DNA of 64,000 bases from contig OZ038379.1 of NCBI GenBank assembly GCA_964036045.1, positions 2,480,001 to 2,544,000 on the forward strand, given 5' to 3'. Under the pieces are notes generated by a model. That model saw only the letters and a list, made by a program, of their open reading frames with translations, did not search any database and was not told the DNA's origin. Each line of letters starts with the position of its first letter. Positions within the stretch are counted from its first letter, which is position 1. Positions 31,511 to 50,640 of the stretch are shown one piece after another. The DNA comes from Eutreptiella sp. 'Long Island Sound 2002' (Eukaryota > Protista > Euglenida). Position numbers and translations under genes: made by a program.

Positions 31511-31542
31511 CTAGTGTAAATGCCGGCGCTTGAAGCGCGGGC
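31511..31542 (-). mobile_element. Helitron 3' terminus (GC-rich hairpin + CTAG followed by host T)
   Basis: Minus strand gcccgcgct-tca-agcgccggc (8 of 9 pairs), 7 nt, CTAG|T. It lies ~860 bp downstream of the PIF1 stop. Matches the canonical hairpin/CTRR/T rule. Confidence 0.7.
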
Positions 31543-32212: not shown

Positions 32213-32285
32213 CGTTAGGGATAGAGGTTGACTTAGCACCAAAGTTGTAGTTGGGGTTAGGGCAAGGGTCAAGGTGAGGGTTGGT
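32213..32285. repeat. Degenerate (TTAGGG)n/(CCCTAA)n-like tract in Helitron 3' UTR
   Basis: Minus strand 6-nt periodicity: CTCACC TTGACC CTTGCC CTAACC CCAACT ACAACT ... CTATCC CTAACG. Confidence 0.55.
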
Positions 32286-32368
32286 GTCAAATATATGTAG
32301 AAAACGTGGGTTTCAGATGTAAATGGAACGTGAACAAGACACACTCCGGTGACGAGTGGAGCCACACT

Positions 32369-33068
32369 TCATCCAGCAAGGCAATGGACGACGGCGAAAT
32401 CAAGAAAAATTTCAGACCATACAATGTTCGGAGTGTTTGCCTCCTTGGTTACATCCCCCCAAGCACGTTCCCCCAAAATGACGCGAACGCCACGGTGTGA
32501 GGTACCCCGCGAAAAGCCAACATATAGTTGTCCATGGGCAAAAACAGGATTCTCCAAGAGCAACCCCAACCTTTCAAACGACTGCCCTTGGGAACGATTA
32601 ATCTTCAAGGCGAAAGCCAACTTTATTGGAAATTGTCGCCTAATAAATCTGACCGACAACATTTCAGAATCACCACACGTCAAATTGATGCGTGGAATGA
32701 GCACAACGTTTCCTTTTCGGGGACCTGAGACAATTTCTGCTTGGATGTTGAAGTTCAGGCACTTTGTTACCAACAAGCGTGTTCCATTCATCAAGCCCTC
32801 CTTACGGTTGAGATTGCGCAGTAGAATGATAGGGGCCCCCACCTTAAGCTTGAGCTCGTGACGTGCCATGCCCGGATGCTCAAGCTTGTTCAAGAGTTCC
32901 AGAGGATAGGTAGCTGCATCTTCTTGGCAATCGGCACCAAAATAGTCCGCACTGACATAAACAAACTCCTCTCCCGGCAAGCTCTGCAAGGCCGCTTCGT
33001 TGATAGCATTGGTTTCTTGATTTCGGGGTGCCAGGATACAACCAGACATAAATAGACATAAATTCCTC
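32369..33068 (-). pseudogene. Helitron RepHel: PIF1 helicase C-terminal half
   Basis: ILAPRN, HELKLKVGAPIILLRNL, GLMNGTRL, RRQFPIKLAFALKINRSQGQS, FAHGQLYVGFSR are PIF1 (SF1B) motifs. A 10-bp duplication at 33044-33063 shifts the frame. Confidence 0.95.
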
Positions 33069-34297
33069 CCCTGTGTGCGCGCAATGGTGCATTCTTTCCA
33101 TAGTGCGCGCAAATTTTGAAAAATATGACCTTTGTAGCGCGCCTATTGCGCGCGCTCCACCGCGCTATATTGTCCTGTTTTTCAAAACCTGAAAATGTTT
33201 CAAAACCATGCTTTTTCCAGTGTCATGTGTTTCTCAAAAACCGCAGAAAATCCTGCGGCGTCTGGATGCACCCCGGATGGGAACCACACCACTGTCAATG
33301 GCACTCTGGAGAAAAGCAAGATTGTTAGCCCAGACCTCGGACAACACAGAGGTGGACTTCTCACCACAAAGGGCGACGTTAACAGTCCAGTGGTAGGACA
33401 ACGTCCTTGCCAAGTGACCATGGTTGGCAAAGGAAATGGACATTTGGCAACCACGATTCCCCCCCACAAGGCAACCCATCCCCCCTCACAATGATCCACA
33501 GCTCTCCTTGGCACTCCCTTGGGTATTGGAGATTAGAAACAATGGAATCAAAGGAAAATATATAGTCGAAAAAGTGCTGCAGGGGCCATTGCGAAAAGAC
33601 CGTGACGCCATGTGTGTGCACGTCAACCTCTAAATGCTGCCTACTTGCAAGCTGGTTCCATTCTGTGGCGAAACTAGCATAGGACGGTAGAGAAAAAAGG
33701 TGTGTGGGGACCTTACTTCGGGTCCAAGTAATCAAATCTTTGTACCTGAGGAAATAGCGCGCGCAACATGAGAACGTAGCGCGCACAGAAGTCAACGAAG
33801 CGCGTGCTAAGAGCGGAAGTGCGCGCAATGTCACATGCAAAGCGCGCGCAATAATACCTTCTTCTCGGAATCTTTAGGAGCAGGACCAAGTCTTCCACCG
33901 ACAGGGGTGTGACGGCGTTGGCAGCCTCGGTCCTGCGACGCTTCTTCTCTGCTTCAGACACGGGGACCCTTTTTTCCGACTTGGCCCACAAAGACCGTTG
34001 GACGGCAGACCCTGAGCAAAAAAACTCAACTAGGTCCGCCAAAAGGTCCTCGTTCTTCCACAAGGACCACCCATAGTGGGGGCCCAAAATGTTTGCAATC
34101 TTTCCTGACATTGACAACGTCACTTGCGGTGCCGGAAGCATCTGAAACTTTAGAGAAATAGGCGTTTTTGCCCTGCTCATTAGGACATGGGGTCACAAAC
34201 CCAAGACCCCGCGCCATAGCGCGCGATATGACCTGCAACGTCTTTGTAGTGCGCACTGAGCCATCGCGCGGCAATACCCTGTAGCGCGCACGCAGGG
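33069..34297 (-). mobile_element. Internally deleted CMC (CACTA/Mirage/Chapaev)-like DNA transposon, short copy
   Basis: TIRs CCCTGTGTGCGCGC / GCGCGCACGCAGGG (13/14) with 2-bp TSD TC. Removing it (and the 10-bp duplication) restores the PIF1 frame MSQEEFMSGCILAPRN. Superfamily assignment is inferred from termini, TSD and DDE motifs. Confidence 0.85.
33234..34141 (-). pseudogene. DDE transposase N-terminal/D1-D2 region (short copy), intron 33746-33857
   Basis: The spliced frame reads IPRR|RYKDLITW...LWIIVRGDGLPCGG (first catalytic D). After a frameshift it continues ...VALCGEKSTSVLSEVWANNL...RRIFCG and ends at the deletion breakpoint. Confidence 0.65.
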
Positions 34298-35016
34298 TCC
34301 TGGCTCATGGTTGGAAAGACGTGGTTTACTAGTGGCCAGGGGTCATCGCTTGGGATCAACATGTCTTCCGGTATGGGCAACGAATTGTCGATGGTGTCCT
34401 CCCCAACGGATAGCAACCAGCGTGCAAACTCACAGGTCTCGTCATCGTCAACTTGAGAAGTGCCTTGCACCCGAATATTGGTCGTCAATTCGAGTATTTT
34501 GAAATAGGGCCAGAGGTACGATTTTTTGAGGGTAGCTGCTATCACGGCCGCTCGAGAGCCACGAGGTACAACAGGCAAAATTTGCCTCCAATCCCCCGTC
34601 ATGACGACGGTCTTGCCCCCGAAGGGAACAAGTCGCAGTGCTTCATCATCGGCAACCATGATATCTTTCAGCAATTCATCCAATACGCGGAAGCAATCGT
34701 TGTCTGCCATGGGAGCCTCATCCCACACAATGAGTCGGCACTCACGACGTTCCGCGGCACGTTTGCTCTCCACAGGAGTGGATGATGTTCCGCCCTTTTG
34801 CGGCGAAATACCAAAAGCTGAGTGCGCAGTTGAACCATCATCCAAAAGAAGAGAAGCGATGCCAGTTGAGGCAACCGCAATCGCCCGTCGTCCCTGACTA
34901 CGTACATAGGCCAACATCAAATTGTTCACGTAAGTCTTTCCGCAGCCACCGCAACTCAGAATAAAGAAGCACTTTGCGTCGTTGCCGTCCAAATGTGTAC
35001 TCGCAGTGACCTGGTC
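34298..35016 (-). pseudogene. Helitron RepHel: PIF1 helicase N-terminal half
   Basis: GGCGKT (Walker A), AVASTGIASLLL, TAHSAF, LIVWDEAPM (Walker B), PFGGKTVVMTGDWRQILPV, LTTNIR. Confidence 0.95.
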
Positions 35017-37883
35017 CTAAATGTTGCGTTGCTGCTCTGTCAAGGTTGGCGCACCATCCTCAACGACACGTCGCAAGTGTGCAACATCATACCCTTCATC
35101 CTGACCGTCAGGCTTATCGGACGTTGCACTGGGCACTGGAAACGGCATAGAAGGAAACGAGCGAAGAGAAAGTCCTTGCTTTTGCAGCATGCTCTCGACC
35201 CGCAATAGGGCTTCATTCACAATCTCGGCATGCGTTGGCTCGTTTTTTGCGCCAGGATGTGTACGTTGCCAATTCCAACGAATGTCGCTGATGAACTCTT
35301 CCTCGTACTTTAACCACAGCTTGTAGGGATCTTTTGGGGAGTTGTACTCCAAGATGGTGCAAAAAAGAAGTCGTTGTCGGCCGGGTTTGTAGTACATTTT
35401 TGCCTCGTTCAGACATTGTTCCCACTCGGTGTCATCTTCTAGAAGGCCGCAACGTACGCATGCTTCTTGAAAAGTGGCACATAGGTTGCTGTTAACGGTA
35501 CGCAAATCTTGGAAAGAGGTTGCACGAGCAACATGGTGTAACAATAGTCGGAGAAAGTATACTTCGCCCGCATTCGGGAGCACAAAGTACATGCGACCAC
35601 TTACTGTGTTCGATCCTTTCTTTCGAAATTTCCACTCTTTGGTCCTTGCATCATACGTGACCGCTCGGCATAGTCGGTGTAGAGCAAGTGCTTACCGAAA
35701 GCATGACCCGGCTTGGCGTTGGACTTCAACCAAGCGACCAGTGGTGTGTCAGGGGGTCCATCTCCAACGATGTCAGTAAGATGTTGTTGGTCCTTCCATC
35801 GAACGTGCTGCTGGTTTTCTAAGTGAACTGGTAGCCGCAATACCAAGGGAAATTGCTCATGTAGGTCAAATGCCAATAGTCTCCACACTCCTTCAGATGT
35901 GCAAATGTACCGGCCCTCCACGAACTCCACAACTTCGTTGACTTGATCGTCTCGTAGGCTGGCTTCGCCCCGGTCAAACCCCTTGTAAATGTACTCGTGC
36001 AAGTATTTGATAGCCGCAAGTGAGGCAGAGTACTCCACGTTGATGTGGCAAGCATATTTTCTGGCCAACGCACGCACATGTGGAACCACCCAACGATTAT
36101 CAAGTTCATGCCCCCTGCATGTTATAGTGCGGCCGTTGTTGCGACGGCAATAAAGAGGATATCCGTTCTCGCTGTTCGTGGTCACATCTTGGAATTCCCT
36201 CGGGTACCGATTTTTACAACGTCCATCCTTCATGCATGACCATTTCGGGTCGAGGGAACCGCATGGACCGTGCATGTAGCATTTTCCAATAATCTCGTAC
36301 AGCTCCGGGTCCTCATCCTTGTCTCGAATCTCAGCACAAATGACAGAATCATAATCCTCAGGTGTGAGCAATTTGTAGCCGGCGGCAAAGATAACCAAGA
36401 TATGTGCATGTGGTAGCCCACGTTTTTGAAATTCGATGACATACATGTGGCCGACTGTGCGACCAAGATAGCCATCATTCAGAAGGTCTTCTAACAAAGA
36501 CTGCAGCTTCAGCTTGAAAACGCGGGTAATCGAATCGGGATGATCATTTGGTTTTTGTCCTGGCAGTAGAGCGGCCTCCACCTCCAGCCAATTGGGATTG
36601 GCTGCCATGGTAATTAACAGGTCTGCCTTGCCCCGTTCGTTACAAATAGCAATCCCATCCTGAAAAGCGGCATGAAGAGCGCGCGGACTCCCGCCAAAGG
36701 AGCTGGGCAAAATTGACCGCTTTCCAACGGATGAAGCGTTGCGATCACCTTTTTTGGGTAGCACCGTCAACACCCGAATACAAATGTGTGCGCAATTTGG
36801 ACTGGTTCTGGGAGACATATTGCAAGCGTTGAGATTCCACCTTGCAATACTGGTCCACGATGTATTCCTCGTACAATTTTTGACATCGTTGCAAATAATT
36901 TCCAATGTACGATTCCGGACGCTGCATGAGGTAGAAGGTGGCAAAGTCTCGGGCTGTAACCGTCTGATGGCTTTTGGGCTTTGGGGCATTGCCTTGCTCT
37001 AGATTTTCGCATGCGCCGCGCTGACGCCGATAAGTGACATTCAGGGGAATGTCAATTGTCTAGCCTTGCTCACCGCGCGGAAAAAGGAGTACAAAGTGTA
37101 AAGGATCGTGGGCAGAGTTCAGGTCGGTGATACGTTTGACCCCACCCCCATGCATGCGGACCGCAATGCTACGAAGAGCGGCAACATGACTGCCATCCGG
37201 AATGAACGATGCAATGTCGCTGACACGGGGAACATTGTAGGTGCGTGGGTCAACGTTGGCATTGCACCGGAGCAAGATGGTCACATTGGGGACCTCAAGC
37301 TCAGCCGCGTGTTGAAAAAATTGTACATAGGCGTTGTGTGTGTTCAGCATAGCTCCCAGTTGGCGGAGTAGATCCTCTCTCAATTCCGATGACAGTGGAA
37401 GTCCCTAACATGCCTTCACTTGATCTTCGGTTTCCAAAATGTACACCTGTGCAAACCGTGGTGGTCGATTTTCTCTCGGCGTCAGGGGACCCATGCGGTG
37501 ATACACATTTCCAGACACCCGAAACTGGTGAGGGCCACCCGCCATTGGCCCTTTCTTGAACCGCATGTCGATATTTGCTTCAAGAGAGGCCATGGTGAAG
37601 GCTGAGTTGTACTTCCGAATGTTTTGCCGAAAATGGCGTCCCTGTCCAGTTTGCTCGGTCAATAGGGTTTTGAGCGGTTCCGGTGGATCAAGCAGAATGG
37701 GAAGTTTCACTTGTCCGCCACGGCAACAAATGGTAGGTGGCTCGGCACTCCAACGTAAAGTGTGACAATGTTCACACTCCACTTCCATGTTGTCAAGGAC
37801 GTGGCGCTTGATGTGGGTAATATCTTCATCGGCCTTTGATCTAAACAAGCATTCGTGGCGCAACCTTTGCATTTCCAATGCAT
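35017..37883 (-). pseudogene. Helitron RepHel: Rep/HUH endonuclease domain and linker
   Basis: CEHC..CCRGGQV, FRQNIRKYNSAF, RFAQVYI, DPLHFVLLFPRGEQG, LLITMAANPNW, EFQKRGLPHAHIL (HUH), HGPCG, YLHEYIYKG (motif 3), YFLRLLL. Stops at 37405, 37060 and 35017; frameshifts near 36770 and 35650. Confidence 0.95.
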
Positions 37884-38247
37884 CCCTGTGTGCGCGCAAT
37901 GGTGCATTCTTTCCATAGTGCGCGCAAATTTTGAAAAATATGACCTTTGTAGCGCGCCTATTGCGCGCGCTCCACCGCGCTATATTGTCCTGTTTTTCAA
38001 AACCTGAAAATGTTTCAAAACCATGCTTTTTCCAGTGTCATGTGTTTCTCAAAAACCCCTTGCTTTTCCAAAACATTACCTGTTGCTCACCCATCCCAAG
38101 ACACATGCAAAAACACTTTCTGCAAGGTCTGAGAAGTGTGCAACACTACAGGTCCTCATGGGCAACAACAGTGTAGCGCGCGCAAAATATTTACAGCGCG
38201 CGCTATGGATCTTACGGCGCGCGCTATATCAGGTATAGCGCGCACTA

Positions 38248-41053
38248 TCATCCAGTGGTCTCCTTAATGTTTGTGACCACCACTTCGGACTCCCACTGCT
38301 TCTCCCATGCTGCTCTTTGGTCTTCTGCCCCGGCTGCAGCTGGGGCTGTGTCCCCTTCTTCTTGTGCACTTGGGTCGCCTTCTGGGGTTGCTCCTTCTAG
38401 TGCCCCTTCTTCTTTCGGGGCTGCTCCTTCTCCTTCTGTTGTCTCTCCTTCTTGTGGCGCGGCCGCTGGTGCCTCTTCTTCTTGTGGTGGGGCTGGTGCG
38501 TCTTCTTCTTGTGCAGTTGCTGCTGGGGCTGGTGCCTCTTCTTCTTGTACAGCTGCAGCTGGTGCTTCTGCTTGTGCTGCAGCTTCGGCAGGTCCCTCTC
38601 CTTCTTGTGGGGAGGCTGGTGGCTGGGCTGGTGGGTCTCCTTGGGGCTGGTTCTTCTTTGGGGTTGGTGGCTTTGACGGGGACATCCTCATGGTCTTTGG
38701 GTCGGGGTTGAGGTCCACAATTTCATCGGGCTCGTACGTCTCCCACCACGACTGCCACTTGTCCAACTCCTCATACCTCCTCATACGCTTTTCTTTTGGC
38801 GGAGAACACCTGGCAGGTGGGCATGAACTCCGACCAGTCGTCCTCTTCCTCCTCCTCCTCCCCTTGTTTGCTCCCTTGTTGGCTGGGGCTCCACTGATAG
38901 TTGGGGATGATGACGGCCACGTGGTCCTGAGGGGCCCTCCTGGCCCCTGTTGGCTTGATTTCGGCTCTTTCCACAATCATCGGCGCGATCGCAGTGGTGC
39001 AGTAGATGATCCACCGAGGCTTGTAGCCGTCCTTGTAGGACCAATCTCGGCGCAGCATGAGCTCATCTCTTGCCAGCTTGTCCACGTCGGCTTTGCTCTG
39101 CTGCTTGGCCTTGGGAGCCGTACTGGGTGGGGTGGAACCGCACGGACCTCCTTGTTCTTGTGGCTGGTCTGGGACTGGGAGCGGCTGCTTCGGTGCTGGC
39201 TTTGATGCTAGCTGCGGCTGCGGTGCCTGCTTTGGTGCCTTCTTCACGTTGGGGCCAGTCTTGCTTGCCTGGAAAGAGAAGCGCAGAGGCATGGCACGCG
39301 TAGTACAGGGCATAGCACGCGCGGCGAAATGCATAGCACGAGCAATGACACCGATAGCGCGCGCTGCAGCATTACCTTTTCTGCTTTCTCCTCCTCTGCT
39401 TTCTTCCGTCTCTTCTCCTCCTCTTCCTTCTCCTTCTTCTTCCTCTTCTCTTCCTCTTCCTTCTCCTTCTTCTTCCTCTTTTCCTCCTCTTCCTTCTTCT
39501 TCTTCTTTTCGTCGTCCTCTTTCTTCTTGTTCTGTTCCGCTTGACGTTGGACTCTCTGTGGCGCTGCTGCCATCAGCTGCTGGTCGGCGGTCTTCTGGGC
39601 AAGGACCTTGCCAGGCGGGTGGGGGGGCTTAGCGGAGTGGGAGGCGGAGATGGCTGGTGGTAGGTGGCCGGTGGCTGGTGGCTCCTCGGTACGCTTCTTC
39701 TTCTGCCTTGGGGCTGTCACGGGTTCCATCTCCGGCATGGCAAAGGCGTCGGCCCAGTCCACCTCCAGCTCCTCCATCTGCCGCTTAGCCCGGGCCAGCA
39801 CCGGGGAGGGGCCTTGCTCCTTCCATCCGTCAAGCCAGTCGGCCGCATGCTTGGACTGCCCGGCAATGTCCGCGGGCACGCTGATCATCAACGGCCCTCT
39901 GCGGGATACCAGGCACAGGAGCTGCTCGAAGCTGCCCCCCTACGTGAAAACATGATAGACGGTGGGGCCGTAGCGCGCGCAAACGGTCAAATCGCGCGTG
40001 CTACGGCAAATGAAGCGCGCGCAACAATGTCGGCAGCGCGCGCAATGGCAAACATAGCGCGTACTTGTTGTTGTTGCTGTTGTGGTCTTCGCAGTTGCTG
40101 TTGGGCCATCTGCTGCGGCTGGGCCATCTGCTCCTGCTGCTGCTGCTGGAACAGTTGCAGTGTTGCCTGCTGGACTGCTGCCTGCTGTTGGAGCTGCTGC
40201 TGTTGCTGCACTTGCTGCTGCTGCGGCTGCTCCTTGTCCTTGACCGCCGTGGTTTTGACTTTGGCGCCGGTTGCAAGTGCCCTTGCTGCACTGGCTCCTT
40301 TCATGGCTGACCCCCGCAGCAAACTGGCCCCCGCACTTCTCACCGAGGGACACTCGTTCTTGAAGGCCATTGCCCCCGCGTCCGTCGCATTGATAAAGCT
40401 CGGTGGGTCCTTGTTGAAGTAGAAGTGGTGGACGGTCTTTGCGGTGGCACCCGGGAGGCGTGTGAGTCGGAACGTGACCCCACCCGTAACTTGCCCAGCA
40501 CGAAAACAACAGCTCGTACTCCTCCACGTTGCAGTGTCCACAGGCAGCTTGTCCTTCTTGGGTTGGCACGGAGGGATTCAACAGGTTCGCCAGACTGCAC
40601 CAGTTGCCAGTAGTGCTTTCGTCATGCCAGCAGGGTTTCAGAGCTCTGTCGGGGATCCTTGCAAGCGCCGTAGCTCTTGGGCGCCAGAACTTGCTGCGTT
40701 GGGGAGAACTGGGTCAGCTGCTAGGACAGTGTCTGCGGAAAACAAGACAAACGGCGTTAACAAGGACGCGCAACGAGGACTTGCGTAGTGCGCACAACGA
40801 GACGGGTAGCACGCACAAGAAGAGCGTAGCACGCGCAACGGAAACAGTAGTGCGCACGGCAAGAAACCTGTGGCTGCATGCTCCACGGCGTCGTCGACGG
40901 CTGCTGCAGTCCCGGTTGTACAGCTGCATGTGGCAGTGGTGGCGGCGCCGCAGCAGCTGGTGTTGCCGCTGCAGCAGTTGTTGGCGGTGCTGCAGGAGGC
41001 GGATACCCCCAGCCCACGGGTTGTATGGGCAAGAGGGTTACATTAAAGTACCC
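38248..41053 (-). pseudogene. Second, spliced gene of the CMC-like element (Q/P/E/K low-complexity protein; TnpA-like position)
   Basis: GT-AG introns 40733-40867, 39940-40064 and 39269-39375. The last two join adjacent ORFs in phase 0 (QQQ|GGSFEQLL; AEK|ASKTGP). Two stops and a frameshift in one exon; 10-bp duplication at 38767-38786. Confidence 0.6.
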
Positions 41054-41322
41054 CTGTTCCAGCAGTAATACAAAAAGGAAAACGCAGCAACAAAAAAATA
41101 GAAAACGACAAAAAGAACGGACAGAAAAGCAACAAATCTCTGTGTCTGTCAATGCATTCGCAATTGGCGCCAAATCTGAAGTGCGTAGTCATAGCACGCT
41201 ACTTCTGATTGTATATCGCGATTTCAAGGGTTCCGGCGCTTGAAAACAGCATACGCGCGCGATAGTGGTCATTGCGCGCACTAGATTCTATTTAGCACGC
41301 GCTATAAAACAAATGGCGCGCG

Positions 41323-42459
41323 CTACCACGGTTCCTCATCCGCAAAATATGCCCTAGCGTCGTCGGCCAATTTTTGTGCATTGTACAAGTTGCTTCTGGA
41401 GGTCCCGTTCCACCTTGGTACTTCAAAGTACAGGAATAGACGCTCATTAACCTGCCTCAGCATCTTAATGCGGCGCGACACTAGGCTTCCTGCCCCCCCA
41501 ACTCTATCACAAATAGAGGACCAAATGTCCTTCAGCACCCCGTTGCTCCCTTCCAAAAGATCCCCCGAAAACATTCCTAGGCCATAGGACCGTATGGCCT
41601 GAATAGTGACTGTAGCATCGTGCAACAGCCAGTTAATATAAGGTGATCTTTTTTCGGCGCAAACCCACCTCTGGAAAGCCTGGGCAACCTCTGGAGCCTG
41701 CAATGCTCCCTCTTCAAACATTGTGCCATACATGTCCCCCAGTAGTATGTACATGGCAACCACTGATGTGTGCATCCTCATGTCACCCCCACCCATCCCC
41801 CCTCACAATGATCCACAGCTCTCCTTGGCACCCCCTGGGGTATTGGAGGTTAGAAACAATGGAATCAAAGGAAAATATATAGTCGAAAAAGTGCTGCAGG
41901 GGCCACTGCGAAAAGACCGTGACGCCATCTGTGTGCACGTCAACCTCTAAATGCTGCCTACTTGCAAGCTGGTTCCATTCTGTGGCGAAACTAGCATAGG
42001 ACGGTAGAGAAAAAAGGTTTGTGGTGACCTTACTTCGGGTCCAAGTAATCAAATCTTTGTACCTGAGGAAAATAGCGCGCGCAACATGAGAACGTAGCGC
42101 GCGCAGAAGTCAACGAAGCGCGTGCTATGAGCGGAAGTGCGCGCAATGTCACATGCAAAGCGCGCGCAATAATACCTTCTTCTCGGAATCTTCAGGAGCA
42201 GGACCAAGTCCACCACCGACAGGGGTGTGACGGCGTTGGCAGCCTCGGTCCTGCGACGCTTCTTCTCTGCTTCAGACACGGGAACCCTTTTTTTCAACTT
42301 GGCCCACAAAGACCGTTGGACGGCAGACCCTGAGCAAAAAAACTCAACTAGGTCCGCCAAAAGGTCCTCGTTCTTCCACAAGGACCACCCATGGTGGGGG
42401 CCCAAAATGTTTGCAATCTTTCCTAACATTGACAACGTCACTTGCGGTGCCGGAAGCAT
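41323..42459 (-). pseudogene. DDE transposase (long copy) with D1-to-pre-E deletion, intron 42063-42175
   Basis: IIVRGDG is fused to GGDMRMHT. SPYINWLLHDAT...YGLGMFSGDLLEGSNGVLK resembles the catalytic-E helix of Transib/RAG1/Chapaev-type transposases. Confidence 0.7.
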
Positions 42460-42615
42460 CTGAAACTTTAGAGAAATAGGCGTTTTTGCCCTGCTTATTA
42501 GGACATGGGGTTACAAACCCAAGACCCCGAGCCATAGCGCGCGCTATGACGCGCGATGTCTTTGTAGTGCGCACTCAGCCATCGCGCGGCAATACCCTCA
42601 AGCACGCACGCAAGG

Positions 42616-44052
42616 ATGGGCCCTCCGCACTCGCCTTTGCTCATTAATGTTGTCTTTGGCCTCTGGATATCGCTCCCGTCTTTGCTCATTGATGTTGTCC
42701 TAGTTCTGCGTGTACGCCTCTGGATATCGCTCCCGTCTTTGCTCATTGATGTTGTCCTTCGCCTCTGGATATCGCTCCCGTCTTTGCTCATTGATGTTGT
42801 CCTTGTCCGCCTCTTGCTATCGCTGCCGTCTTTGCTCATTGATGTTGTCCTTGTTTGCCTCTTGATATCCCTCCCGTTTTTGCGCATTGATGTTGTCCTT
42901 CTTTTGCGCGTACACTTGTTTATATCGTTCTCGTCTTTGCTCATTGATGTTGTCCTTGTTCTGCGCGTACGCCTCTGGATATCGCTCCCGTCTTTGCTCA
43001 TTGATTTTTTCCTTCGCCTCTTGATATTGCTCCCGTCTTTGCTCATTGATGTTGTCCTTGTCCGCCTCTTGATATCGCTGCCGTCTTTGCTCATTGATGT
43101 TGTCCTTGTTTGCCTCTTGATATCGCTCCCGTCTTCGCGCATTGATGCTGTCCTTCTTTTGCGCGTACACTTGTTTATATCGTTCTCGTCTTTGTTTATT
43201 GACTTCGTCCATGACCTCTTGAGATCGTTCGCGTCTTTGCTTATTGATTTCTTCCTTGCTTTGCGTGCATTGTGCTCGTTTTTCGGCGTGTCCATCATCG
43301 CTTCCCCCTGCATTTAGGTCCAAATGTGGTTCTCGTTGTCGCTTTTTTCGTGCTTGTACGCCATGCGTGTCCGCAGGAATGGGTTGTGCGATCACATTTG
43401 GAGATCCGAGTGCACGTGATGCACTGCTAGCCGGCTGGCCAAAGGTGGGGTTCATATGTGGGTTCAACCCTAATTGGCCTGAGCCAGGCGGCGGAGTGCT
43501 TGCAAAGCTTTGGTGGGAAGATGGATCAAACCAAGGCTGGTTGGGAACGTTTTGTGGGGGCATTGGCAGATATGGAGGGAAGTATGGCTGAGCTTGGGGT
43601 AGTAAAGCTGTTGGTGTGTAATTGACCGCCATGCGATGGACACCCGGAGACGCAACGGCACTGGAACTTAGAGGAATGGTGAAGGACAATGACCCGGGCG
43701 TTGGGATTGGCCCCTCAAATTGTACATTCGGAGTGGATGGGGTACAGCTTGTTGCCACAAGCGGTGACGGCAATGGGCCAGGTTGAACGTTTGAAGCTTG
43801 TACAGGTGGAGGATTGGATGATATTGACGGCGAGGAAGCTTCATGCACGGCCGTAACTATCCCCGATTGCATCATTGCTGACATAAGATCCCTCCAAGCA
43901 TAGTGGTCTTCTGCTTGCCAAAAGAAAAGACGACCCGTAATCCGCTTTTGAGTTGCATCCATCCAACGGTTGAAAATAGGATAATAGTGCATATTCTGTT
44001 GCACGAAAGCATGCACTCTTTCCGCGTCATCGTTGCATAATGTGGGCAACAT
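42616..44052 (-). pseudogene. Helitron RepHel N-terminal extension: ~65-aa globular domain, Pro/Ser linker, KDNINEQRRERYQEA-type repeats
   Basis: ATG at 44052 (MLPTLCNDDAERVH) preceded by a pyrimidine-rich AG acceptor. The repeats at 42630-43260 contain two point stops. The segment joins the Rep domain in frame once the insertion is removed. Confidence 0.8.
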
Positions 44053-45660
44053 GGCGCAACAAATCAACCTTGACAAAGAAGAAATGGAAACAATAATGGC
44101 AAGAACCAGACTGTTGGGCGTGGCCTTGTATGCATAGCACATTGGATGTGCACTGTGGTTTTCTTTCTTGGAATGGTGTTTAGTGATTGGTTGTATTTTG
44201 GGCGTACGTAGCCTTGTATGCATAGCACATTGGAATGATGTCCAGTGATTGGGTATACATACGGCAAACCTCGGAATGCTATAATGGCATCCCCCCCTTA
44301 CCACTTCATCCTTTACACCTAGTCGCTCTGCCTTCTTAATAGTCATTCGCCAAGTGAGCCTCCACTAAAAGGCACATTGGAATGTGCCACGGCCACAACT
44401 ACACATTGAATTGTACATCGCGACCAGGCATTCGTTGGATGTTGTAGTTGTGATCAACTGTCCAGATCCCATTTGACGTTTCCGTTTATGTTTGTCATTT
44501 GCGGTGGAAATACTTTCTTCGAATTTTTTGAACGGTTGTAACAGACAGGCAGCTTGATGCTGTAGTTGTGATCAACCGTCCAAGGTCCAATTGACCTGTC
44601 TATTTCTTCTTCTTATTTGCGGTGAAAATAGTCTATACAAATTTTTTGAACGGTTGTAACCACTCAGGCGAATCATGTACAGCCTACAGATTGGCCCGTT
44701 GCGAAAAAGCACAAATTGAGGCAGCACACCTAGAAACGATTGTTCAGGGCCGCCTTTTCAACACGCCGTGGAGGTGTAAACCAAATGCTTCAAATCACCG
44801 TTGTGTGCCGATAATGCAATAACAATTGCTAGGTATGAAATCGGTCAAAACCAATCGAGATTGCATTGGTTGTTCATTACAATAACACACTTTCCGGGTT
44901 GATTTAGCCCATATTGCAGGCAACGGGTAGCACAAGGAGTGTGGGACACAAGGCATCACAAAATCGGTATTTTCACAACAATCAAACGTTACCAATTTCC
45001 GGGCTGGGCGCCCATTGGTACGAAATTTGGAGCGTCTTTGTTTTTTATAGGCACGTGAACAACGAGTTTGGGAATGTTCATTCTCCTTGAAAACATGATC
45101 TTTTACTTGACGATGGCTCTTTTGTCGGACACCCAAAAGATAATGCAACTACCCACTTGGGCCCCTCTTGGCTGTTTCCTTGTTCTTACTGAGGTTTGTG
45201 TGCCATTGATGTAGTACCCATGGGATGGGACATCTAACAATGGGACAGATTACAAACTATGAATTGGGGTGGACCAGCAATATTTCATGTCACCAACACA
45301 ATTGCTTCTCACCCCATGCATTCAAACGCAAACATCCAATAGTGAGCATTGTGAATGGTCCCACACAAAGGGTGCTTACAGCATGTAGATTCGCCAATTG
45401 TTGCTATAATACATGTTGTAAATACATAGCAATTGAAGACAGGTGTTCCTTAGAGAACACTGCGCGGAATCAAGCACTAAGCAACAGATCATCATTGTAG
45501 GCACGGATATCGTTAATTTGCAATATATACACAAAACGCCCATGGTGTGTTGTGGCTTGCGACAGAAACAGTATTACATAAAGACGACGGGCGAGTTTTC
45601 CCTAAAAAATCAGTACGTGATGATGTTGCGTAAAGCAACCAATCATTGCAAAACCAAACT

Positions 45661-46161
45661 TCACTTCTGACCAAAAAATTGGTCTAGAGTGCGTTGTTTA
45701 CAATCTGAGTCGCGTGATTGTTCGGGCATTCGTAAACGTTGGTTGCAATTTTTTTTAGAATGCCCCTGCGGGGTGCCGCCTTTGCTGATGTGCCTTTCTT
45801 GTCGTTGAGATTTGTGACTCTTCATGGCACGTTGTACGCTCGTCTGAGGCAACGCTTTTCGGGCTGCAAATGCAAAAATAGGAGCAATTTGCCGAGACTG
45901 TTGGGACAAAGTATTGTTGGCCTTGGACGCGGAAGAGGACGAAGCTGTTGCTTGGACGCTCGTTGATGTAGCTGAAACAGACAACCCATCAGCCAACATA
46001 TCTTTCATTAAACGGGCCCAAGCACGCTCGTCGTCCTCATTCCAAGAGTAGAAATTTCGGCTGGCATCCTCATATGCAGTCACCACGGGGGCGTACTCTG
46101 GGTGACTTTGCGCAAACATGTGTACTTTCTCAAGGTCAAGTATAGACAAAACGGGCAACAT
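45661..46161 (-). CDS. Small protein: RepHel-N-like domain + C-terminal PCNA-interacting (PIP) box
   Basis: Intact 166-aa ORF from MLPVLSILDLEKVH, ending KQRTLDQFFGQK* (QxxLxxFF at 45673-45696). Splice-acceptor-like sequence lies 10 nt upstream of the ATG. Confidence 0.7.
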   Translation of the reverse strand: MLPVLSILDLEKVHMFAQSHPEYAPVVTAYEDASRNFYSWNEDDERAWARLMKDMLADGLSVSATSTSVQATASSSSASKANNTLSQQSRQIAPIFAFAARKALPQTSVQRAMKSHKSQRQERHISKGGTPQGHSKKNCNQRLRMPEQSRDSDCKQRTLDQFFGQK

Positions 46162-46564
46162 GGTGCATACTCTACCATAAAACAAGGCGGAGAAGCGTGA
46201 CATGACCTGACAAAGGACTATGGTCATATTCTGCCAATCTTTCACAAGTGGCACGGCATACAACACCATGGAAAACACCCTGGTTCCTACACGTAAGTGC
46301 ACGAGGTTTTTCTTTCTGTGTGGTGATACGTTGCACCAGCACCGCCAACCTGCGTGGACGTAAAAAATCCCGGTGCAACTAACCAGCATTTGCCTAAATG
46401 AGTCCTAGCTGCTCCAATAGATTAGGCCACACAACAACAACATGCCCTTCGAGGGTGCACCGCGGGGTGCAACACGGCAATGTCGCTCACATTGCAATGG
46501 CAAGGGTGCAGCGAAGTCCAATTCAGACCCCTTTGCCGGTTGACAACCTTTAGTATGGTTTCTA

Positions 46565-47848
46565 TCATGGTGTATTGCCCACAACCTGACAGTAACGCAA
46601 CACATCGATGTACGTTGCCCCATCGTGAAAGTACAACCATGTGGCGTCGCCCACGTACATGATTTTGCCAACGCCCTTCAAAATGGGCTGCACATCTTGC
46701 GGTGTAAGGACCAAAGGGAAAATCATTGGTTTCAGCGGTGCGGCCGCCTTGGCATTAGGAACTTTGGCAATAGCGTTCAGTGTGTCCAATGGATTTTCGA
46801 ACATGACCTTGGCCCCCGCTTGGGCGTCTACGGCCATGTAGTGTGGTTTTAGGTCGGTGCCAATGACCGTTGTGAGCTCAATGTACGACTTCACGGTTGC
46901 CAACGAGATCTCCAGGGCAGGAAGGTTGACAACCATGTATGAAGTGGAAGGACTTGGCTTTTCTTCCAAGGAGGCCAAAAAAGCCTCACAATCGCCATCA
47001 GACACATCATCGTCGATCTTATGCTCCGTTGCCGACTTGTAATAGAAGCGGCGTGCAACTTTAATGCGGTCTTCAGGCTTGGCTTGATTAAGCAACTCTT
47101 TCAAACCCACCCGTAACTTGTTTGTCACCTTCTTATCCAGTACGGCCGCCATCTTCGCAGTGCAAAACGCCTTTTCAACATTGATGGGTGTTGGCTGGCC
47201 TTGCACGGTGTATGTCCATTTGCTCGTTTCTGCCCGTTGCCTTTTATCCAAATCCTCTTGGACTGTGGCAGGCGAATTTTCTGCGCTTTTGCCCGAACTT
47301 TTCTCAACGGCATCTGGTACTTTTCTTTTCAGAGGCCCAGAGCGAGTTTTCAACGGGGTCAATGTCATGTTGGGATCTACCCAAAGAAAGAAGTCGCACG
47401 CTTCGCACGAGTAGAATGAACGACCAGCATTCTTCGTGTTTGTGCACGAGTGTACTTCTGGCACCTCTCCGCAGTCACACCGTGGCTGACCATCTGCCCC
47501 TTTGCAACTTGGGTGAATGACTGCCCAAGATTTGAAGCACTTGTCCTGTTTTTCCGGACATGAGCGCGTCAAACACCCGTAGTTTGCTTTCCTTGAGCAA
47601 TATCGCACCTCAAACTTGTTGCCACACTTGCAGGTTTGCTTGATCCAGTATGCTTTGGCAGCAGCTGCACTATCGAATTCGATCTCAATATTGGAAGGCG
47701 ACATGTCAACAGCAACAATGATTCTACGATTAGCAGACGTGGTGCAGCCTGGTTTGTTCATTGCAACATGAATCATGCAGCACGTGTGATTCTTAGCATG
47801 TCTCGTGAGCAGTGGTGTCAACCAACGTATAGTATTGGGGCAAAACAA
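46565..47848 (-). CDS. Tandem GRF zinc-finger protein with C-terminal RRM-like domains
   Basis: CKCG...CPEKQDKCFKSW and CDCG...NTKNAGRSFYSCEACDFFLWVD. YMVVNLP...AKVMFENPLDTLNAIAKV resembles RNP2/RNP1, and a second degenerate RRM-like segment follows. The ORF is intact; the true start is uncertain. Confidence 0.75.
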   Translation of the reverse strand: MFCPNTIRWLTPLLTRHAKNHTCCMIHVAMNKPGCTTSANRRIIVAVDMSPSNIEIEFDSAAAAKAYWIKQTCKCGNKFEVRYCSRKANYGCLTRSCPEKQDKCFKSWAVIHPSCKGADGQPRCDCGEVPEVHSCTNTKNAGRSFYSCEACDFFLWVDPNMTLTPLKTRSGPLKRKVPDAVEKSSGKSAENSPATVQEDLDKRQRAETSKWTYTVQGQPTPINVEKAFCTAKMAAVLDKKVTNKLRVGLKELLNQAKPEDRIKVARRFYYKSATEHKIDDDVSDGDCEAFLASLEEKPSPSTSYMVVNLPALEISLATVKSYIELTTVIGTDLKPHYMAVDAQAGAKVMFENPLDTLNAIAKVPNAKAAAPLKPMIFPLVLTPQDVQPILKGVGKIMYVGDATWLYFHDGATYIDVLRYCQVVGNTP

Positions 47849-48681
47849 TTGGAAAGTTGTTGCTCCGCCTTTTCATGCCAATGCCACCCGCACATCCAAT
47901 GGGCACTTTTTCTTGGCTACCAAACCTTTGACGCCTAGAATTCATCATTTTTTGCTTTTTGTTTTTTGCTTTACGGGAAATCTGAATTTTAAACAAACCT
48001 TTTTTGGCTTATCTTGGACCCAACGCATAACGCGTGTAACCCGACCGTAAAAAGTACGCTGTGCGTACTCAACACCACACTGTAATGCCAAAACGGGGCT
48101 TTGAATGGTGATGATCACTTTGTTGGGGCCGGTAACGTAGTCCAATGAATTTCCTTTTTTCGGCATAGGGCTGCGCAATGTTGTGGATTGCTTTTGTGCT
48201 ATTGCAGGCGATTTTTGCTTTACATGCTTGTTGCGTGTCATGCCCGTCTTATAGGAGGTTTCCATCTCGTGTTCACCCCTACCACCAAAAGGCGGAGGTA
48301 ACTTCCACGAGATTTCCCAACCCTCCAAGTGGTTGGGCTCTTACCCACGAAGGGCAACCCCGGTCAAAGGGCACATGACAACCCACCTTGGCGGAAGGAT
48401 CACCAATTTCCAGGCTGGGCCGCCCATGGAAATCGGAGTTGGGCCGAAGCCACACTCGACCATCCAAGGCCGCACTGTGCTGCATTTGATACCATTGCAC
48501 CCCCTTCACATTTGTGCTTTTCCATGTGATGTGAGCAATACTTTGGGTCCCAGAAAAATGCCAACAAAGGCCCATGGTGTTGTGAAGTAGACACATTATC
48601 CAAATAAAGTAGAGAGATAAACCGGCATTGCAACCAAAGATGCACGCAAAATGGGCAGATAGTGACACGATGGGGTGTCAA

Positions 48682-49323
48682 TTACAAATGCATGTTGTAA
48701 TTCGTTGTATATAAGATTGCACGTAGCTGCTCGAATAGGCGAGAGTCCGAGTCTTTGAAGACACTCATTGGCAAAATGTACACGATGCGACAGCTACGAC
48801 AACCACGGTCAAATGCTTCAAGTGGTAAACGGGATACGGCATTGTCGCAGGACGTGTGCTTTGTCACCACAACAACGATATCATCCTCAGGGTAAAACAT
48901 GCCCTCTACTGATGCACGACTACAAATATAAAACGTGTTATGGAATAAGTTTATGCGGCGCAACCAACGGGGTTTCATTTCTATCGTACAATAAATAGGA
49001 ACCACCAATTTTTTGCATCGACACATGGGTTCACTAAGTGCCATGGACACCACCAATCCCATAAACATGGATGGCGGAAAGTGCATACTCGAGTATTCGC
49101 GGGTATGATAAAACTCCAAAAATTGCAATGGAAACAGCATTCGTCGAGGCAAACAATTGAAGATATTTATTGTGAACCTATGGTAGCAATGGACACGCAA
49201 ATTTGCATTGGAAAAGAAATGATGCCAAAAACACAGCATTAGTGCCTCTACAGGTGAAAGGAAACACAGTATTATTTCAATTGCGTCGTAGCAAATGCTG
49301 CTTAATGAGCGACACGTTGACAT
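48682..49323 (-). CDS. F-box-like protein (213 aa)
   Basis: MSTCRSLSSICYDAIEIILCFLSPVEALMLCFWHHFF has F-box-like hydrophobic spacing. Uninterrupted ORF; the remainder is unrecognised. Confidence 0.45.
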   Translation of the reverse strand: MSTCRSLSSICYDAIEIILCFLSPVEALMLCFWHHFFSNANLRVHCYHRFTINIFNCLPRRMLFPLQFLEFYHTREYSSMHFPPSMFMGLVVSMALSEPMCRCKKLVVPIYCTIEMKPRWLRRINLFHNTFYICSRASVEGMFYPEDDIVVVVTKHTSCDNAVSRLPLEAFDRGCRSCRIVYILPMSVFKDSDSRLFEQLRAILYTTNYNMHL

Positions 49324-50640
49324 TGTTTGAAGAAACACTAAACCGAATAGACGAAAGCACGGTACAATGGTGCAACACCATGGCACGGGAATCAATTCAG
49401 GTTGCTATGATGAGGGCCTATATTGCTGGTCAATGTGCTGCATTTCTTTTCTTTTGATCAGGGATGGCTCATTGAGGTGTAGATCTGTGGGGCATATATT
49501 TCAACCCGTGACAAACAAATAAAGGCGGTTGTTGCATGAAACTGTTATGCATCCGTCACATGGAAATCGTTTTCAGGCTTGAGGCACAATAGTTGTAAAA
49601 TGAATAAATAATCCCCGTATGCCGGATGATCTTGATGGGCATTCGGATCAAACCAGTTCGGAAGGCCTGATAATCGGGCAGCCGATGCACTCACCGCCGA
49701 AATCTACAACACAATTGATGTGGGGGGATTGTACGTAGGATCACATATTGCATGGAACAAATGTGCTATGTTTACGCGCGGTTATATCCGTGGTTTTTGA
49801 TGGTGTTGGTCGGACCTACTTAGGTGTGTTTTTAGGAACGCGTCGTCACAAAAAAACTTTGCGTTAACGTACCGAGTGATGACACCACCTCATAGCTCAT
49901 AGGTCCCTTGAAGTTTTTCTGCCCTCAATGCATCGGCTTCGGCCACGACGACATCAGCAAAAACCAAAAAGAGAAAGAACATTTTTCCAATTTCCCGCAG
50001 AAAAAAGGGGGAAAATCGTGCGACAGAATTACGCTTCCGAAATCTCATAGGTTCAACATGTCAAGGTGAATGTCGACACTGAAGGCTTGTCATTGCTGAT
50101 TGTACAGTGGCTTTCCTTTTTACAGGCATGTGAACAAAGAGTGCTGGAATGTTTGCTTTATTTGAAAACAATGTACTATCGTTTTTGGGGACTCAGATGG
50201 GCTTCTCCTGACTATTTCCTGGTTCCTAGAAAGGTCTATGCCCCATCAATGAAATACCCAATGGGATCGGACACGTAAGAACGGGAGGAATGGTACGCAA
50301 AAGAAAAAACCCTCCGGCACGGCAAAAGACACACGCACCCATATGATCGCTCCGTTGTACTCAAAATGTACTGCACGGTAACCAACCTCCATTTTGCAAT
50401 CCTCAACCCACCCCCGGCTCAGCGTCCTCTTCAAGGAGCCGCATGCCACTGGCTATAATGGTTGGTGATCTGGAACGTTGGCTTTGTGTCATATGCTGGG
50501 TCCACTTCAAGTTGATGATTTAGAATCTTTCATCACCCTTTCCTCTCACCAAGTGATTTGCAATTTATCGTCGAGCAATTAGGCACGGGAAAAGGTCTCT
50601 TCCGAACACAATGCGATGTTGAAGAGGCAAGTGTGAAACT

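What the first reader, a model, noticed from the sequence alone, without database searches (positions are those of the whole stretch)
43850..46161. Unrecognised ~65-aa domain shared by the Helitron RepHel N-terminus and a neighbouring PIP-box protein
Seen: the RepHel start MLPTLCNDDAERVHAFVQQNMHYYPIFNRWMDATQKRITGRLFFWQAEDHYAWRDLMSAMMQSGI aligns by eye with MLPVLSILDLEKVHMFAQSHPEYAPVVTAYEDAS--RNFYSWNEDDERAWARLMKDMLADGL (MLP.L...D.E.VH.F.Q...Y.P...DA...R.F.W..D..AW..LM..M..G). The small ORF is intact and ends in a perfect QRTLDQFF. Established: QxxLxxFF is the canonical PCNA-binding PIP box; canonical RepHel has no such partner that I know of. Inference: a Helitron-encoded adaptor that binds RepHel through a homotypic domain and tethers it to PCNA/replication forks, or a dominant-negative regulator.
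Basis: partly seen in the sequence, partly recalled or inferred. Interest (0 to 1): 0.8.

Follow-up and report, generated by a model that had tools for sequence, protein, structure and literature searches.

The report
Helitron helper protein with PCNA motif
A rolling-circle transposon (Helitron) in an unidentified eukaryote carries a small extra gene whose protein begins with a diverged copy of the transposase's own first ~60 residues and ends in a conserved motif of the kind that binds the DNA sliding clamp PCNA, which gives a testable clue to how Helitrons connect to host DNA replication.

Summary
Two minus-strand ORFs start with the same ~60-aa domain. BLASTP gives 34% identity and E 1e-10; profile-profile comparison gives 97.6% probability and E 3.5e-12.

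- **RepHel link.** An intact sister copy shows that the first ORF is the N-terminus of a single 1875-aa Rep/PIF1 transposase. In the window this gene is split by two insertions.
- **The small gene (B).** It is 166 aa and lies between a GRF-zinc-finger gene and RepHel. The same order recurs in a second Helitron family of the same genome, which shares only ~25% identity.
- **Conserved parts.** That family keeps the domain, a central [IL]AP[IL]F motif and the C-terminal motif (KQRPLRQFL versus KQRTLDQFF). Among 16 family-1 copies the C-terminus is the least variable part. pN/pS is 0.44-0.53.
- **Structure.** AlphaFold predicts an acidic three-helix bundle followed by a disordered tail.
- **No relatives.** No Pfam, PDB, fold or Atlas relative was found, and no homologue outside this one assembly.

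PCNA binding, binding of the small protein to RepHel, and expression are all untested. My best reading is a Helitron-encoded clamp adaptor that works alongside a GRF single-strand-DNA binder.

The scan reported the same gene earlier on another piece of this genome (s1-222734). I rate it a new variant of a known kind.

The parts
31511..50452 (-). One copy of an autonomous canonical-type Helitron (family 1). It is about 18.9 kb here because of nested insertions; the intact copy L001 is about 10.6 kb. The 5' limit is provisional.
   Evidence: Collinear with L001/L002/L007/L008. The 3' end is defined by a hairpin plus CTAG. The 5' limit is the point where homology to the other copies stops.
31511..31542 (-). 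3' terminus: hairpin GCCCGCGC-TTCAA-GCGCCGGC, a 7-nt spacer, then CTAG followed by T
   Evidence: Identical terminus in L001, L002 and L008. L001 and L002 are 99.8% identical over 15.9 kb and diverge right after CTAG-T.
50424..50452 (-). Provisional 5' end (CAGTGGCATGCGGCTCC...). The other copies carry a (TTAGGG)7 tract directly upstream of it.
46565..47848 (-). Accessory gene 1: a protein with two GRF-type zinc ribbons and an unassigned C-terminal half
   Evidence: Pfam Zn_ribbon_GRF at 23.3 bits, just under the 25.9 cut-off. 89-93% identical to the 448-aa product in L001. pN/pS 0.39, p 0.0018.
45661..46161 (-). Accessory gene 2 (B): 166-aa protein counted from the Met at 46161. The frame stays open upstream to 46389.
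   Evidence: pN/pS 0.44.
45982..46161 (-). N-terminal ~60-aa three-helix domain of B, a paralogue of the RepHel N-terminus
45874..45888 (-). Central motif IAPIF (LAPLF in family 2), lying in the disordered linker
   Evidence: Conserved between families. Local rise in pLDDT at residues 96-104.
45673..45696 (-). C-terminal PIP-type motif QRTLDQFF, followed by GQK and the stop codon
43858..44052 (-). N-terminal three-helix domain of RepHel
42671..43857 (-). RepHel linker: a Pro/Ser-rich stretch, then about nine 48-bp (16-aa) repeats of the type DKDNINEQRRQRYQEA
37884..42670 (-). Foreign insertion splitting RepHel (4.8 kb)
   Evidence: Absent from L001. Shares an 825-bp end with the second insertion.
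34298..37883 (-). RepHel middle part: zinc-finger-like region, HUH Rep domain and the first half of the PIF1 helicase
   Evidence: Helitron_like_N at 127.8 bits. 95% identical to L001.
33054..34297 (-). Second foreign insertion in RepHel (1.2 kb)
32369..33053 (-). RepHel C-terminal helicase part, running to the stop codon
47810..49128 (-). Foreign insertion upstream of the GRF gene
   Evidence: Absent from L001. Related to window 53551-54050.

Best explanation
B is a genuine accessory gene of this Helitron lineage. It arose by duplication of the 5' part of the transposase gene.

Its product has three parts:
- an acidic three-helix N-terminal domain, the same domain that heads RepHel;
- about 100 disordered residues carrying one conserved internal motif;
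- a C-terminal PIP-type motif.

Most likely mechanism (inferred). The C-terminal motif docks in the hydrophobic pocket of host PCNA. The N-terminal domain contacts either the RepHel N-domain itself or the partner that this domain recognises. This would bring the transposition complex and the clamp/polymerase machinery together. The clamp is needed at the nicked donor site, where the free 3'-OH must be extended, and/or at replication forks, where single-stranded target DNA is exposed. The adjacent GRF-zinc-finger protein would hold the displaced single strand.

Shown here: the domain homology, the gene's linkage to the Helitron, conservation of the motifs, purifying selection, and the predicted architecture.

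Inferred only: PCNA binding, the partner of the domain, and any effect on transposition.
For: - **Domain homology.** E 1e-10 pairwise and E 3.5e-12 profile against profile.
- **Intact element.** L001 has GRF (448 aa), B (242-aa ORF) and RepHel (1875 aa, domain at residues 99-163) in a row.
- **Synteny.** The order recurs in L002, L007 and L008. It also recurs in a second family (L003-L006) whose B is only 21-25% identical overall.
- **Motif conservation between families.** DCKQRTLDQFF versus D[CR]KQRPLRQFL, and IAPIF versus LAPLF.
- **Motif conservation within family 1.** In 16 copies the last 16 residues have 2 variable columns. The domain has 12 of 65, the linker 30 of 85 and the upstream extension 20 of 76.
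- **Selection.** pN/pS is 0.44 (p 0.048) for family 1 and 0.53 (p 0.0018) for family 2.
- **Indels.** A 2,154-nt contig from another organism label covers B and GRF with 81 substitutions and no indel. The 150 nt just downstream of B carry 5 gaps.
- **Structure.** AlphaFold gives the domain pLDDT 87.8 with three helices. In full-length B, residues 62-156 are mostly below pLDDT 50, and a short helix sits on the PIP motif. That is the usual setting of PCNA-binding motifs (PMC6881253).
- **Charge.** The domain has net charge -6 in B (counted from the sequence), which fits protein binding better than DNA binding.
- **Thematic fit.** APE2 unites a PIP box and a Zf-GRF that binds ssDNA and PCNA (PMC5861430). 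Here the two features sit on adjacent genes.
Against: - There is no binding data and no RNA evidence; every run that holds the sequence is DNA or of unknown type.
- Family 2 lacks the second aromatic residue (F-L), and one family-1 copy also has F-L. PIP-like motifs are not specific to PCNA.
- Both structure-prediction jobs went on single chains, and typed or joined sequences are not accepted, so no complex was modelled. Nothing supports a domain-domain contact.
- pN/pS is only moderately below 1 and rests on few substitutions.
- All homologues come from one assembly, so conservation is sampled over two families of one genome only.
- The domain tree does not resolve whether the duplication predates the family split (support 54/71).
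Confidence: 0.5

Rival explanations
1. B is a regulator of the truncated-transposase type. It carries only the N-terminal domain of RepHel. It would compete with RepHel for that domain's partner, or form inactive hetero-oligomers with RepHel, and so damp transposition. This would resemble the P-element KP repressor or the Tn5 inhibitor protein. The C-terminal motif would then serve localisation or turnover.
For: B shares only the first ~60 residues with RepHel and has no catalytic part. It is kept in both families. B is intact in all five family-1 copies I examined, while RepHel is a single ORF in only one of them.
Against: B is a separate gene only 34% identical to RepHel in the domain, not a product of the transposase gene itself. 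The strongest conservation is in the C-terminal motif, which a pure competitor would not need. B is short, so its better survival is expected by chance.
Confidence: 0.2
2. The C-terminal motif binds a partner other than PCNA, for instance another replication or repair hub that reads FF-type or hydrophobic short motifs, or one of the element's own proteins such as the GRF protein or RepHel. B would then be an internal scaffold of the transposition complex.
For: Family 2 has QRPLRQFL, with Pro at position 3 and Leu at position 8. PCNA-type motifs overlap with other motif classes, and confirmed binders vary widely (PMC6881253). A second conserved motif, [IL]AP[IL]F, shows that the tail carries more than one docking site.
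Against: Family 1 matches the canonical consensus at all four defining positions. Its setting is typical: the extreme C-terminus, a disordered region, and Lys/Arg next to the motif.
Confidence: 0.15
3. B acts on the host rather than on the transposase. As a small disordered PCNA ligand, like p21, it would occupy PCNA and slow or remodel S phase, creating conditions that favour rolling-circle transposition.
For: The architecture is a small protein with a long disordered tail and a terminal PIP motif.
Against: This does not explain why B keeps the RepHel N-domain under constraint (12 of 65 variable columns). There is no PIP-degron signature: no TD at positions 5-6, and the basic residue is at +3 rather than +4.
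Confidence: 0.08
4. B is a decaying partial duplicate of the RepHel 5' end with no function, and the PIP match is chance.
For: Helitrons often duplicate and capture fragments. A strict PIP motif appears in 0.8% of shuffles. No expression is shown.
Against: The ORF, the domain, an internal motif and the C-terminal motif all persist in a family only ~25% identical. pN/pS is significantly below 1. The C-terminus is the most conserved part among 16 copies. A C-terminal strict PIP occurs in only 0.04% of shuffles.
Confidence: 0.05

Closest known systems
PCNA-binding PIP box of Pogo transposase (Drosophila) and related Tigger/pogo elements
   Same: A DNA-transposon protein carrying a canonical Qxx[LIM]xxFF-type motif. 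The Pogo motif is strong enough to have been used in the high-affinity 'PL' peptide (PMC4103810).
   Different: In Pogo the motif is part of the DDE transposase itself. Here it sits on a separate small protein of a rolling-circle (HUH) element, and that protein also copies the transposase's N-terminal domain.
APE2 (PIP box plus Zf-GRF)
   Same: It combines a PCNA-docking PIP box with a GRF zinc finger that binds single-stranded DNA and the PCNA C-terminus, acting at nicks (PMC5861430). The Helitron encodes both features side by side.
   Different: In the Helitron the two features are on two proteins, there is no nuclease domain, and there is no sequence homology beyond the GRF ribbon.
RPA-like, OTU, endonuclease and other accessory genes of Helitron-like elements
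   Same: Extra genes that travel inside Helitrons, several of them tied to DNA replication or single-stranded DNA (HELIANO survey, PMC11417382).
   Different: That survey lists 20 stably carried Pfam domains, and the paper contains neither 'PCNA' nor 'zinc finger'. B has no Pfam domain, so it would be invisible to such a survey. B derives from the transposase, not from a captured host gene.
LINE-1 ORF2p-PCNA interaction
   Same: A mobile-element protein recruits PCNA, and this is needed for mobility (PMC7617806).
   Different: LINE-1 is a retrotransposon. The contact now favoured is a non-canonical surface on the folded ORF2p, not a terminal PIP motif on an adaptor.
Bacterial transposases and TnsE that bind the beta sliding clamp
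   Same: Transposition proteins use a short clamp-binding motif to couple to replication (PMC4549789, seen by title and abstract only; TnsE from my own knowledge).
   Different: Those are prokaryotic, use a different clamp and motif, and carry the motif on the transposase or target selector.
Truncated-transposase inhibitors (P-element KP, Tn5 Inh); from my own knowledge, not checked here
   Same: A small protein sharing only the N-terminal part of the transposase.
   Different: Those are products of the transposase gene itself and are identical in sequence to it. B is a separate, diverged gene with its own conserved tail motifs.

Membership tests
Canonical PIP-box PCNA ligands | Motif Qxx[LIVM]xx[FY][FY] | tested here: met
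   QRTLDQFF at 45696-45673. DSDCKQRTLDQF is invariant in 16 family-1 copies, and the last F is L in one copy. Family 2 has QRPLRQFL, so one aromatic is missing.
Canonical PIP-box PCNA ligands | Motif lies in an intrinsically disordered region, often at a terminus, with basic residues in the flanks | tested here: met
   AlphaFold gives pLDDT below 50 for residues 62-95 and 105-156, with a short helix at 159-161. The motif ends 3 residues before the stop. Lys is at -1 and +3, and Arg at position 2. Criteria taken from PMC6881253. This is a prediction, not a measurement.
Canonical PIP-box PCNA ligands | Direct, motif-dependent binding to PCNA | not testable with these tools
   No complex prediction or assay is available, and the host PCNA sequence was not retrieved.
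PIP degron (CRL4-Cdt2 substrates) | TD at positions 5-6 and a basic residue at +4 | tested here: not met
   Positions 5-6 are D-Q and the Lys is at +3. Definition from PMC6881253.
Canonical Helitron (HLE1) | RepHel with an HUH Rep domain and a PIF1-type helicase | tested here: met
   Helitron_like_N at 127.8 bits in the window. PF14214 plus PF05970 plus Pif1_2B on the 1875-aa L001 protein.
Canonical Helitron (HLE1) | 3' hairpin about 10 nt before a CTRR end, with insertion 5' of a T | tested here: met
   GCCCGCGC-TTCAA-GCGCGGGC, then ATTTACA, then CTAG|T in the window, L001, L002 and L008.
Canonical Helitron (HLE1) | 5' end beginning with TC after an A | tested here: inconclusive
   Homology between independent copies stops at TTA|T|TCAGTGGCATGC in the L copies and at AG|CCAGTGGCATGC in the window. 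Only one independent comparison was available.
Helitron accessory gene (travels inside the element) | Lies between the element's ends and recurs at the same position in independent copies and families | tested here: met
   The order GRF, B, RepHel holds in the window, L001/L002, L007 and L008. In family 2, GRF is followed by the small ORF in L003-L006; a RepHel-type N-domain with Rep fragments follows downstream in L004, and further downstream in L003, but not within the 10 kb fetched in L005 or L006.
Known small helical DNA-binding domains (HTH, Myb/SANT) | Recognisable fold or sequence match, and a basic surface | tested here: not met
   Foldseek against PDB gave best E 1.7. VIA-align wide gave best Z 5.3, in the range where helical bundles match by chance. 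Atlas TM was about 0.5 to unrelated families. No Pfam or PDB sequence hit. Net charge is -6 in B and -1 in RepHel.

The most novel reading that the evidence does not exclude
The shared three-helix domain is a heterodimerisation module. Through it the small protein binds RepHel and, through its PIP motif, tethers RepHel to PCNA. Together with the neighbouring GRF single-strand-DNA binder this would form a transposon-encoded, split APE2-like 'clamp plus ssDNA' module. That module would couple Helitron rolling-circle transposition to host replication forks or to repair synthesis at the nicked donor. It would be the first defined host-replisome link for any eukaryotic HUH transposon.
Probability: 0.2. 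Interest if true: 0.8.

Novelty: new variant of a known kind. Interest (0 to 1): 0.6.

Why it matters
How Helitrons recruit the host polymerase and clamp after RepHel nicks the donor strand is not known. Studied elements such as Helraiser encode only RepHel, so the host side has had no handle.

Here the element appears to encode that handle as separate small genes: a clamp-binding adaptor and a GRF zinc-finger protein. Each can be expressed, mutated and pulled down. If the motif binds PCNA, this gives a direct test of whether Helitron transposition is coupled to replication forks.

It also adds a domain family that no database recognises. And it shows that Pfam-based surveys of Helitron cargo miss transposase-derived accessory genes.

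Tried and rejected
- **Family and sequence searches for the domain.**
  - Pfam gave nothing for the domain. B has only a sub-threshold DUF5588 hit (14 bits against a cut-off of 30), which I treat as noise.
  - PDB sequence searches with the domain profile and with the last 35 residues found nothing usable.
- **Fold and Atlas searches.** Fold searches of a confident model against PDB (Foldseek and VIA-align wide) and the ESM Atlas gave only generic helical-bundle matches. The Atlas feature search gave no usable hit.
- **Exhaustive profile search of 1.84 billion representatives.** It returned ten hits. Five are real and all come from one assembly. The other five (P0005-P0009) are repeat proteins with 5-6 partial matches each, and I rejected them as spurious.
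- **Word-index searches.** Searches with B, a B alignment and the GRF protein found only this assembly.
- **Expression.** No RNA run holds the sequence. The laid contigs show presence in two organism labels and in estuary metagenomes, and nothing more.
- **Weak tblastn hit at 58385-58441 (E 0.017).** I found no open frame there and dropped it.
- **A wrong boundary, corrected.** I first took 49973 for the 5' end. Two further copies showed it is the edge of an ~820-bp segment that some copies lack.
- **A discarded calculation.** pN/pS values involving L006 came from a codon misalignment caused by its internal stop and were discarded.
- **Domain tree.** Too weakly supported to date the duplication.
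- **Organism.** Not identified: the accession is in no paper and run labels are coded.
Full report
**What is in the sequence.**
- On the minus strand, an ORF starting at 44052 reads MLPTLCNDDAERVH.... A second ORF starting at 46161 reads MLPVLSILDLEKVH... and ends ...CKQRTLDQFFGQK with the stop at 45663-45661.
- BLASTP aligns the first 65 and 60 residues at 34% identity with one gap, E 1e-10.
- Against the six-frame translation of the whole window the match has E 1.5e-9, and there is no third copy.
- Profiles built separately from RepHel-type and small-ORF-type domains align with hhalign probability 97.6% and E 3.5e-12 over 64 columns.
- The similarity is therefore real. It is confined to the N-terminal ~60 residues; a second local match further on has E 0.085 and I do not count it.

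**Is the first ORF really the RepHel N-terminus?**
- In the window the Helitron_like_N domain (35601-36989, 127.8 bits) lies about 7 kb downstream, so the link was not obvious.
- The closest database relative of the small ORF (P0001, 90% identical) is encoded on two contigs of one ENA assembly.
- In that locus (L001) three genes follow each other on one strand: a 448-aa GRF-zinc-finger protein, the 242-aa ORF, and one uninterrupted 1875-aa protein.
- The large protein has the MLPTLSNHDAERVH domain at residues 99-163. It continues with a Pro/Ser-rich linker, nine 16-residue repeats, a Cys/His cluster, the Rep domain and the PIF1 helicase.
- DNA alignment shows that the window copy is the same element broken by insertions at 37884-42670 and 33054-34297, with a third insertion at 47810-49128.

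**The element.**
- The 3' end is a textbook canonical-Helitron terminus: hairpin GCCCGCGC-TTCAA-GCGC(G/C)GGC, seven bases, then CTAG followed by T (31542-31511 in the window).
- The same terminus occurs in L001, L002 and L008. L001 and L002 are 99.8% identical over 15.9 kb and part right after CTAG-T.
- I first placed the 5' end at 49973. Two more copies (L007, L008) showed that this is the edge of an ~820-bp segment that they lack.
- Homology between the window and all other copies resumes upstream and stops at 50451/50452, where the other copies have a (TTAGGG)7 tract.
- This limit rests on one independent comparison and is provisional. Both accessory genes are well inside it.

**Is the small gene part of the Helitron, and is it kept?**
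- A profile search of 1.84 billion protein representatives found only five true relatives of the domain, all from the same assembly.
- Two of them (P0010, P0011) belong to a second Helitron family. Its Rep region is 35-73% identical to family 1, depending on the segment.
- In family 2 a GRF gene is followed by a small ORF in four loci (L003-L006). A RepHel-type copy of the domain, with Rep fragments after it, lies further downstream in L004 and, more distantly, in L003. Within the fetched 10 kb, L005 and L006 have no RepHel homology downstream, and directly after its small ORF L003 has only the helicase C-terminus.
- The family-2 small proteins are 21-25% identical to B overall. They keep three things: the N-terminal domain, a central motif (LAPLF versus IAPIF) and the C-terminus (D[CR]KQRPLRQFL versus DCKQRTLDQFF).
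- Among 16 distinct family-1 copies, the last 16 residues have 2 variable columns. The domain has 12 of 65, the linker 30 of 85 and the upstream in-frame extension 20 of 76.
- pN/pS is 0.44 (p 0.048) between the window and L001, and 0.53 (p 0.0018) between two family-2 copies. The GRF gene gives 0.39 (p 0.0018).
- Because transposon copies drift neutrally after insertion, these values understate the constraint on active lineages.
- A 2,154-nt contig from a run with a different organism label covers B and GRF with 81 substitutions and no indel. The 150 nt just after the B stop carry five gaps.

**What the protein looks like.**
- With 13 aligned sequences AlphaFold2 predicts a three-helix bundle for the domain: helices 7-19, 21-35 and 42-57, mean pLDDT 87.8, pTM 0.73.
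- In full-length B the domain stays confident. Residues 62-95 and 105-156 fall below pLDDT 50, with small rises at the IAPIF motif and a three-residue helix on the PIP motif.
- The domain is acidic: 11 Asp/Glu against 5 Lys/Arg in B, counted from the sequence. That argues against a DNA-binding role.
- No relative was found by Pfam, by PDB sequence search or by the Atlas language-model search.
- Fold searches also gave nothing usable. Foldseek against PDB had best E 1.7. VIA-align against 48,161 chains had best Z 5.3, a level that helical bundles reach by chance. The Atlas fold search gave TM about 0.5 to unrelated families.

**The C-terminal motif.**
- QRTLDQFF meets the canonical PIP definition Qxx[LIVM]xx[FY][FY].
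- Its setting is typical of confirmed PCNA ligands: a disordered region, the extreme C-terminus, and basic residues beside it (PMC6881253).
- It is not a PIP degron.
- Family 2 replaces the second aromatic residue with Leu. In the curated set of 77 confirmed binders, 43% lack one aromatic, so this weakens the reading but does not exclude it.
- In shuffles of B a strict motif appears anywhere in 0.8% of cases and within the last 15 residues in 0.04%.
- Binding itself could not be tested.

**Mechanism.**
- Established knowledge of Helitron transposition, from my own memory of the Helraiser work and not re-read here: RepHel nicks the donor strand, stays attached to the 5' end and unwinds it. The free 3'-OH must be extended by host polymerases, and the displaced strand is single-stranded.
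- An element-encoded PCNA ligand and a GRF zinc-finger protein fit those two needs. GRF fingers bind single-stranded DNA, and in APE2 they also bind PCNA (PMC5861430).
- APE2 unites a PIP box and a Zf-GRF in one protein acting at nicks. Here the two sit on adjacent genes.
- The role of the shared domain is open. Or both copies may bind the same third partner.
- I put PCNA-adaptor function at about 0.5 and a direct domain-domain contact at about 0.2.
- Rivals: a truncated-transposase-like inhibitor (0.2), a tail motif for another partner (0.15), a p21-like PCNA blocker (0.08) and a functionless duplicate (0.05).

**Comparison with what is known.**
- Clamp-binding motifs on mobile-element proteins are known:
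  - Pogo transposase (PMC4103810).
  - LINE-1 ORF2p (PMC7617806).
  - Bacterial transposases binding the beta clamp (PMC4549789, title and abstract only).
- Helitron accessory genes are also known. The HELIANO survey lists 20 Pfam domains, among them RPA, OTU and endonuclease (PMC11417382).
- The library I searched holds no paper that links the Helitron itself to a PIP box or PCNA motif; one paper contains all three words once each, in another context. No paper there combines Helitron with the GRF zinc finger.
- The HELIANO paper contains neither 'PCNA' nor 'zinc finger'.
- What is new is a separate adaptor derived from the transposase's own N-terminus, paired with a GRF gene, in a rolling-circle element. 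I class it as a new variant of a known kind.

**Limits.**
- All evidence comes from one genome, which is unidentified. The sequence also occurs in runs under two coded organism labels and in estuary metagenomes.
- There is no RNA, no binding data and no complex model.
- The same gene was reported earlier by this scan on another piece of the same genome (s1-222734). Its reading agrees with mine, but I did not use it as evidence.

Noticed in passing
window 45874-45888 (B residues 92-96); L004 B-like protein: A second conserved short motif sits in the disordered linker: IAPIF in family 1 and LAPLF in family 2, with xxx[IL]AP[IL]F spacing. It could be a degenerate second clamp-binding or other docking site.
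   Followed up: partly
window 46565-47848 (-) and 24466-24978 (-): The double GRF-zinc-ribbon gene directly upstream of B recurs in every copy of both families. The 51%-identical paralogue at 24.5-25.0 kb has no B-like ORF or RepHel next to it within the window. The C-terminal half of the GRF protein has no assigned fold.
   Followed up: partly
L001 7620-7666, L007/L008 8170-8218; window 50452-50489: In three copies a (TTAGGG)7 tract abuts the provisional Helitron 5' end, followed upstream by more than 7 kb shared among those copies. In the window an endonuclease-less Penelope-like element starts 38 bp from the same end. This suggests that end-adding elements or telomerase act at this Helitron's 5' end.
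   Followed up: no
window 31476-31510; L001 18313-19013; L008 18800-19182: The sequence just 3' of CTAG|T is similar but much more diverged between copies: an AT-rich ~20 nt followed by GGTTCGTCGTCG. In L001 it belongs to a 343-bp tandem unit. This points to a target preference for one satellite, or to read-through of the 3' end.
   Followed up: partly
window 33474-34297 and 41791-42615: The two insertions that split RepHel share an 825-bp segment at 96% identity in the same orientation. The same unidentified element has hit this Helitron twice.
   Followed up: partly
window 49129-49973; L001 7768-8589: An ~820-bp segment upstream of the GRF gene is present in the window and in L001/L002 but absent from copies L007/L008, which have about 90 bp of other sequence there. 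In L001 it supplies the first 37 codons of the 448-aa GRF ORF.
   Followed up: partly
window 42659-43202; L001 12710-13136: The RepHel linker holds about nine tandem 48-bp repeats encoding DKDNINE[HQ]RR[QE]RYQEA. The repeats are 95% alike in L001 and 79% alike in the window copy.
   Followed up: no
window 46162-46389 and 44053-44346: Both domain-bearing ORFs stay open in frame upstream of the conserved Met (76 and 98 codons). The extension is open in most family-1 copies, and family 2 has a conserved hydrophobic FTLFWLV just before its Met. The true start codons are unverified.
   Followed up: partly
window 54085-54185 and L001 ~4130-4230: The first ~100 bp of the Helitron (CAGTGGCATGCGG...) recur at 82% identity inside a short dispersed repeat, which is also found at window 48231-48474 and 53551-54246. 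These are probably non-autonomous relatives sharing the 5' end.
   Followed up: no
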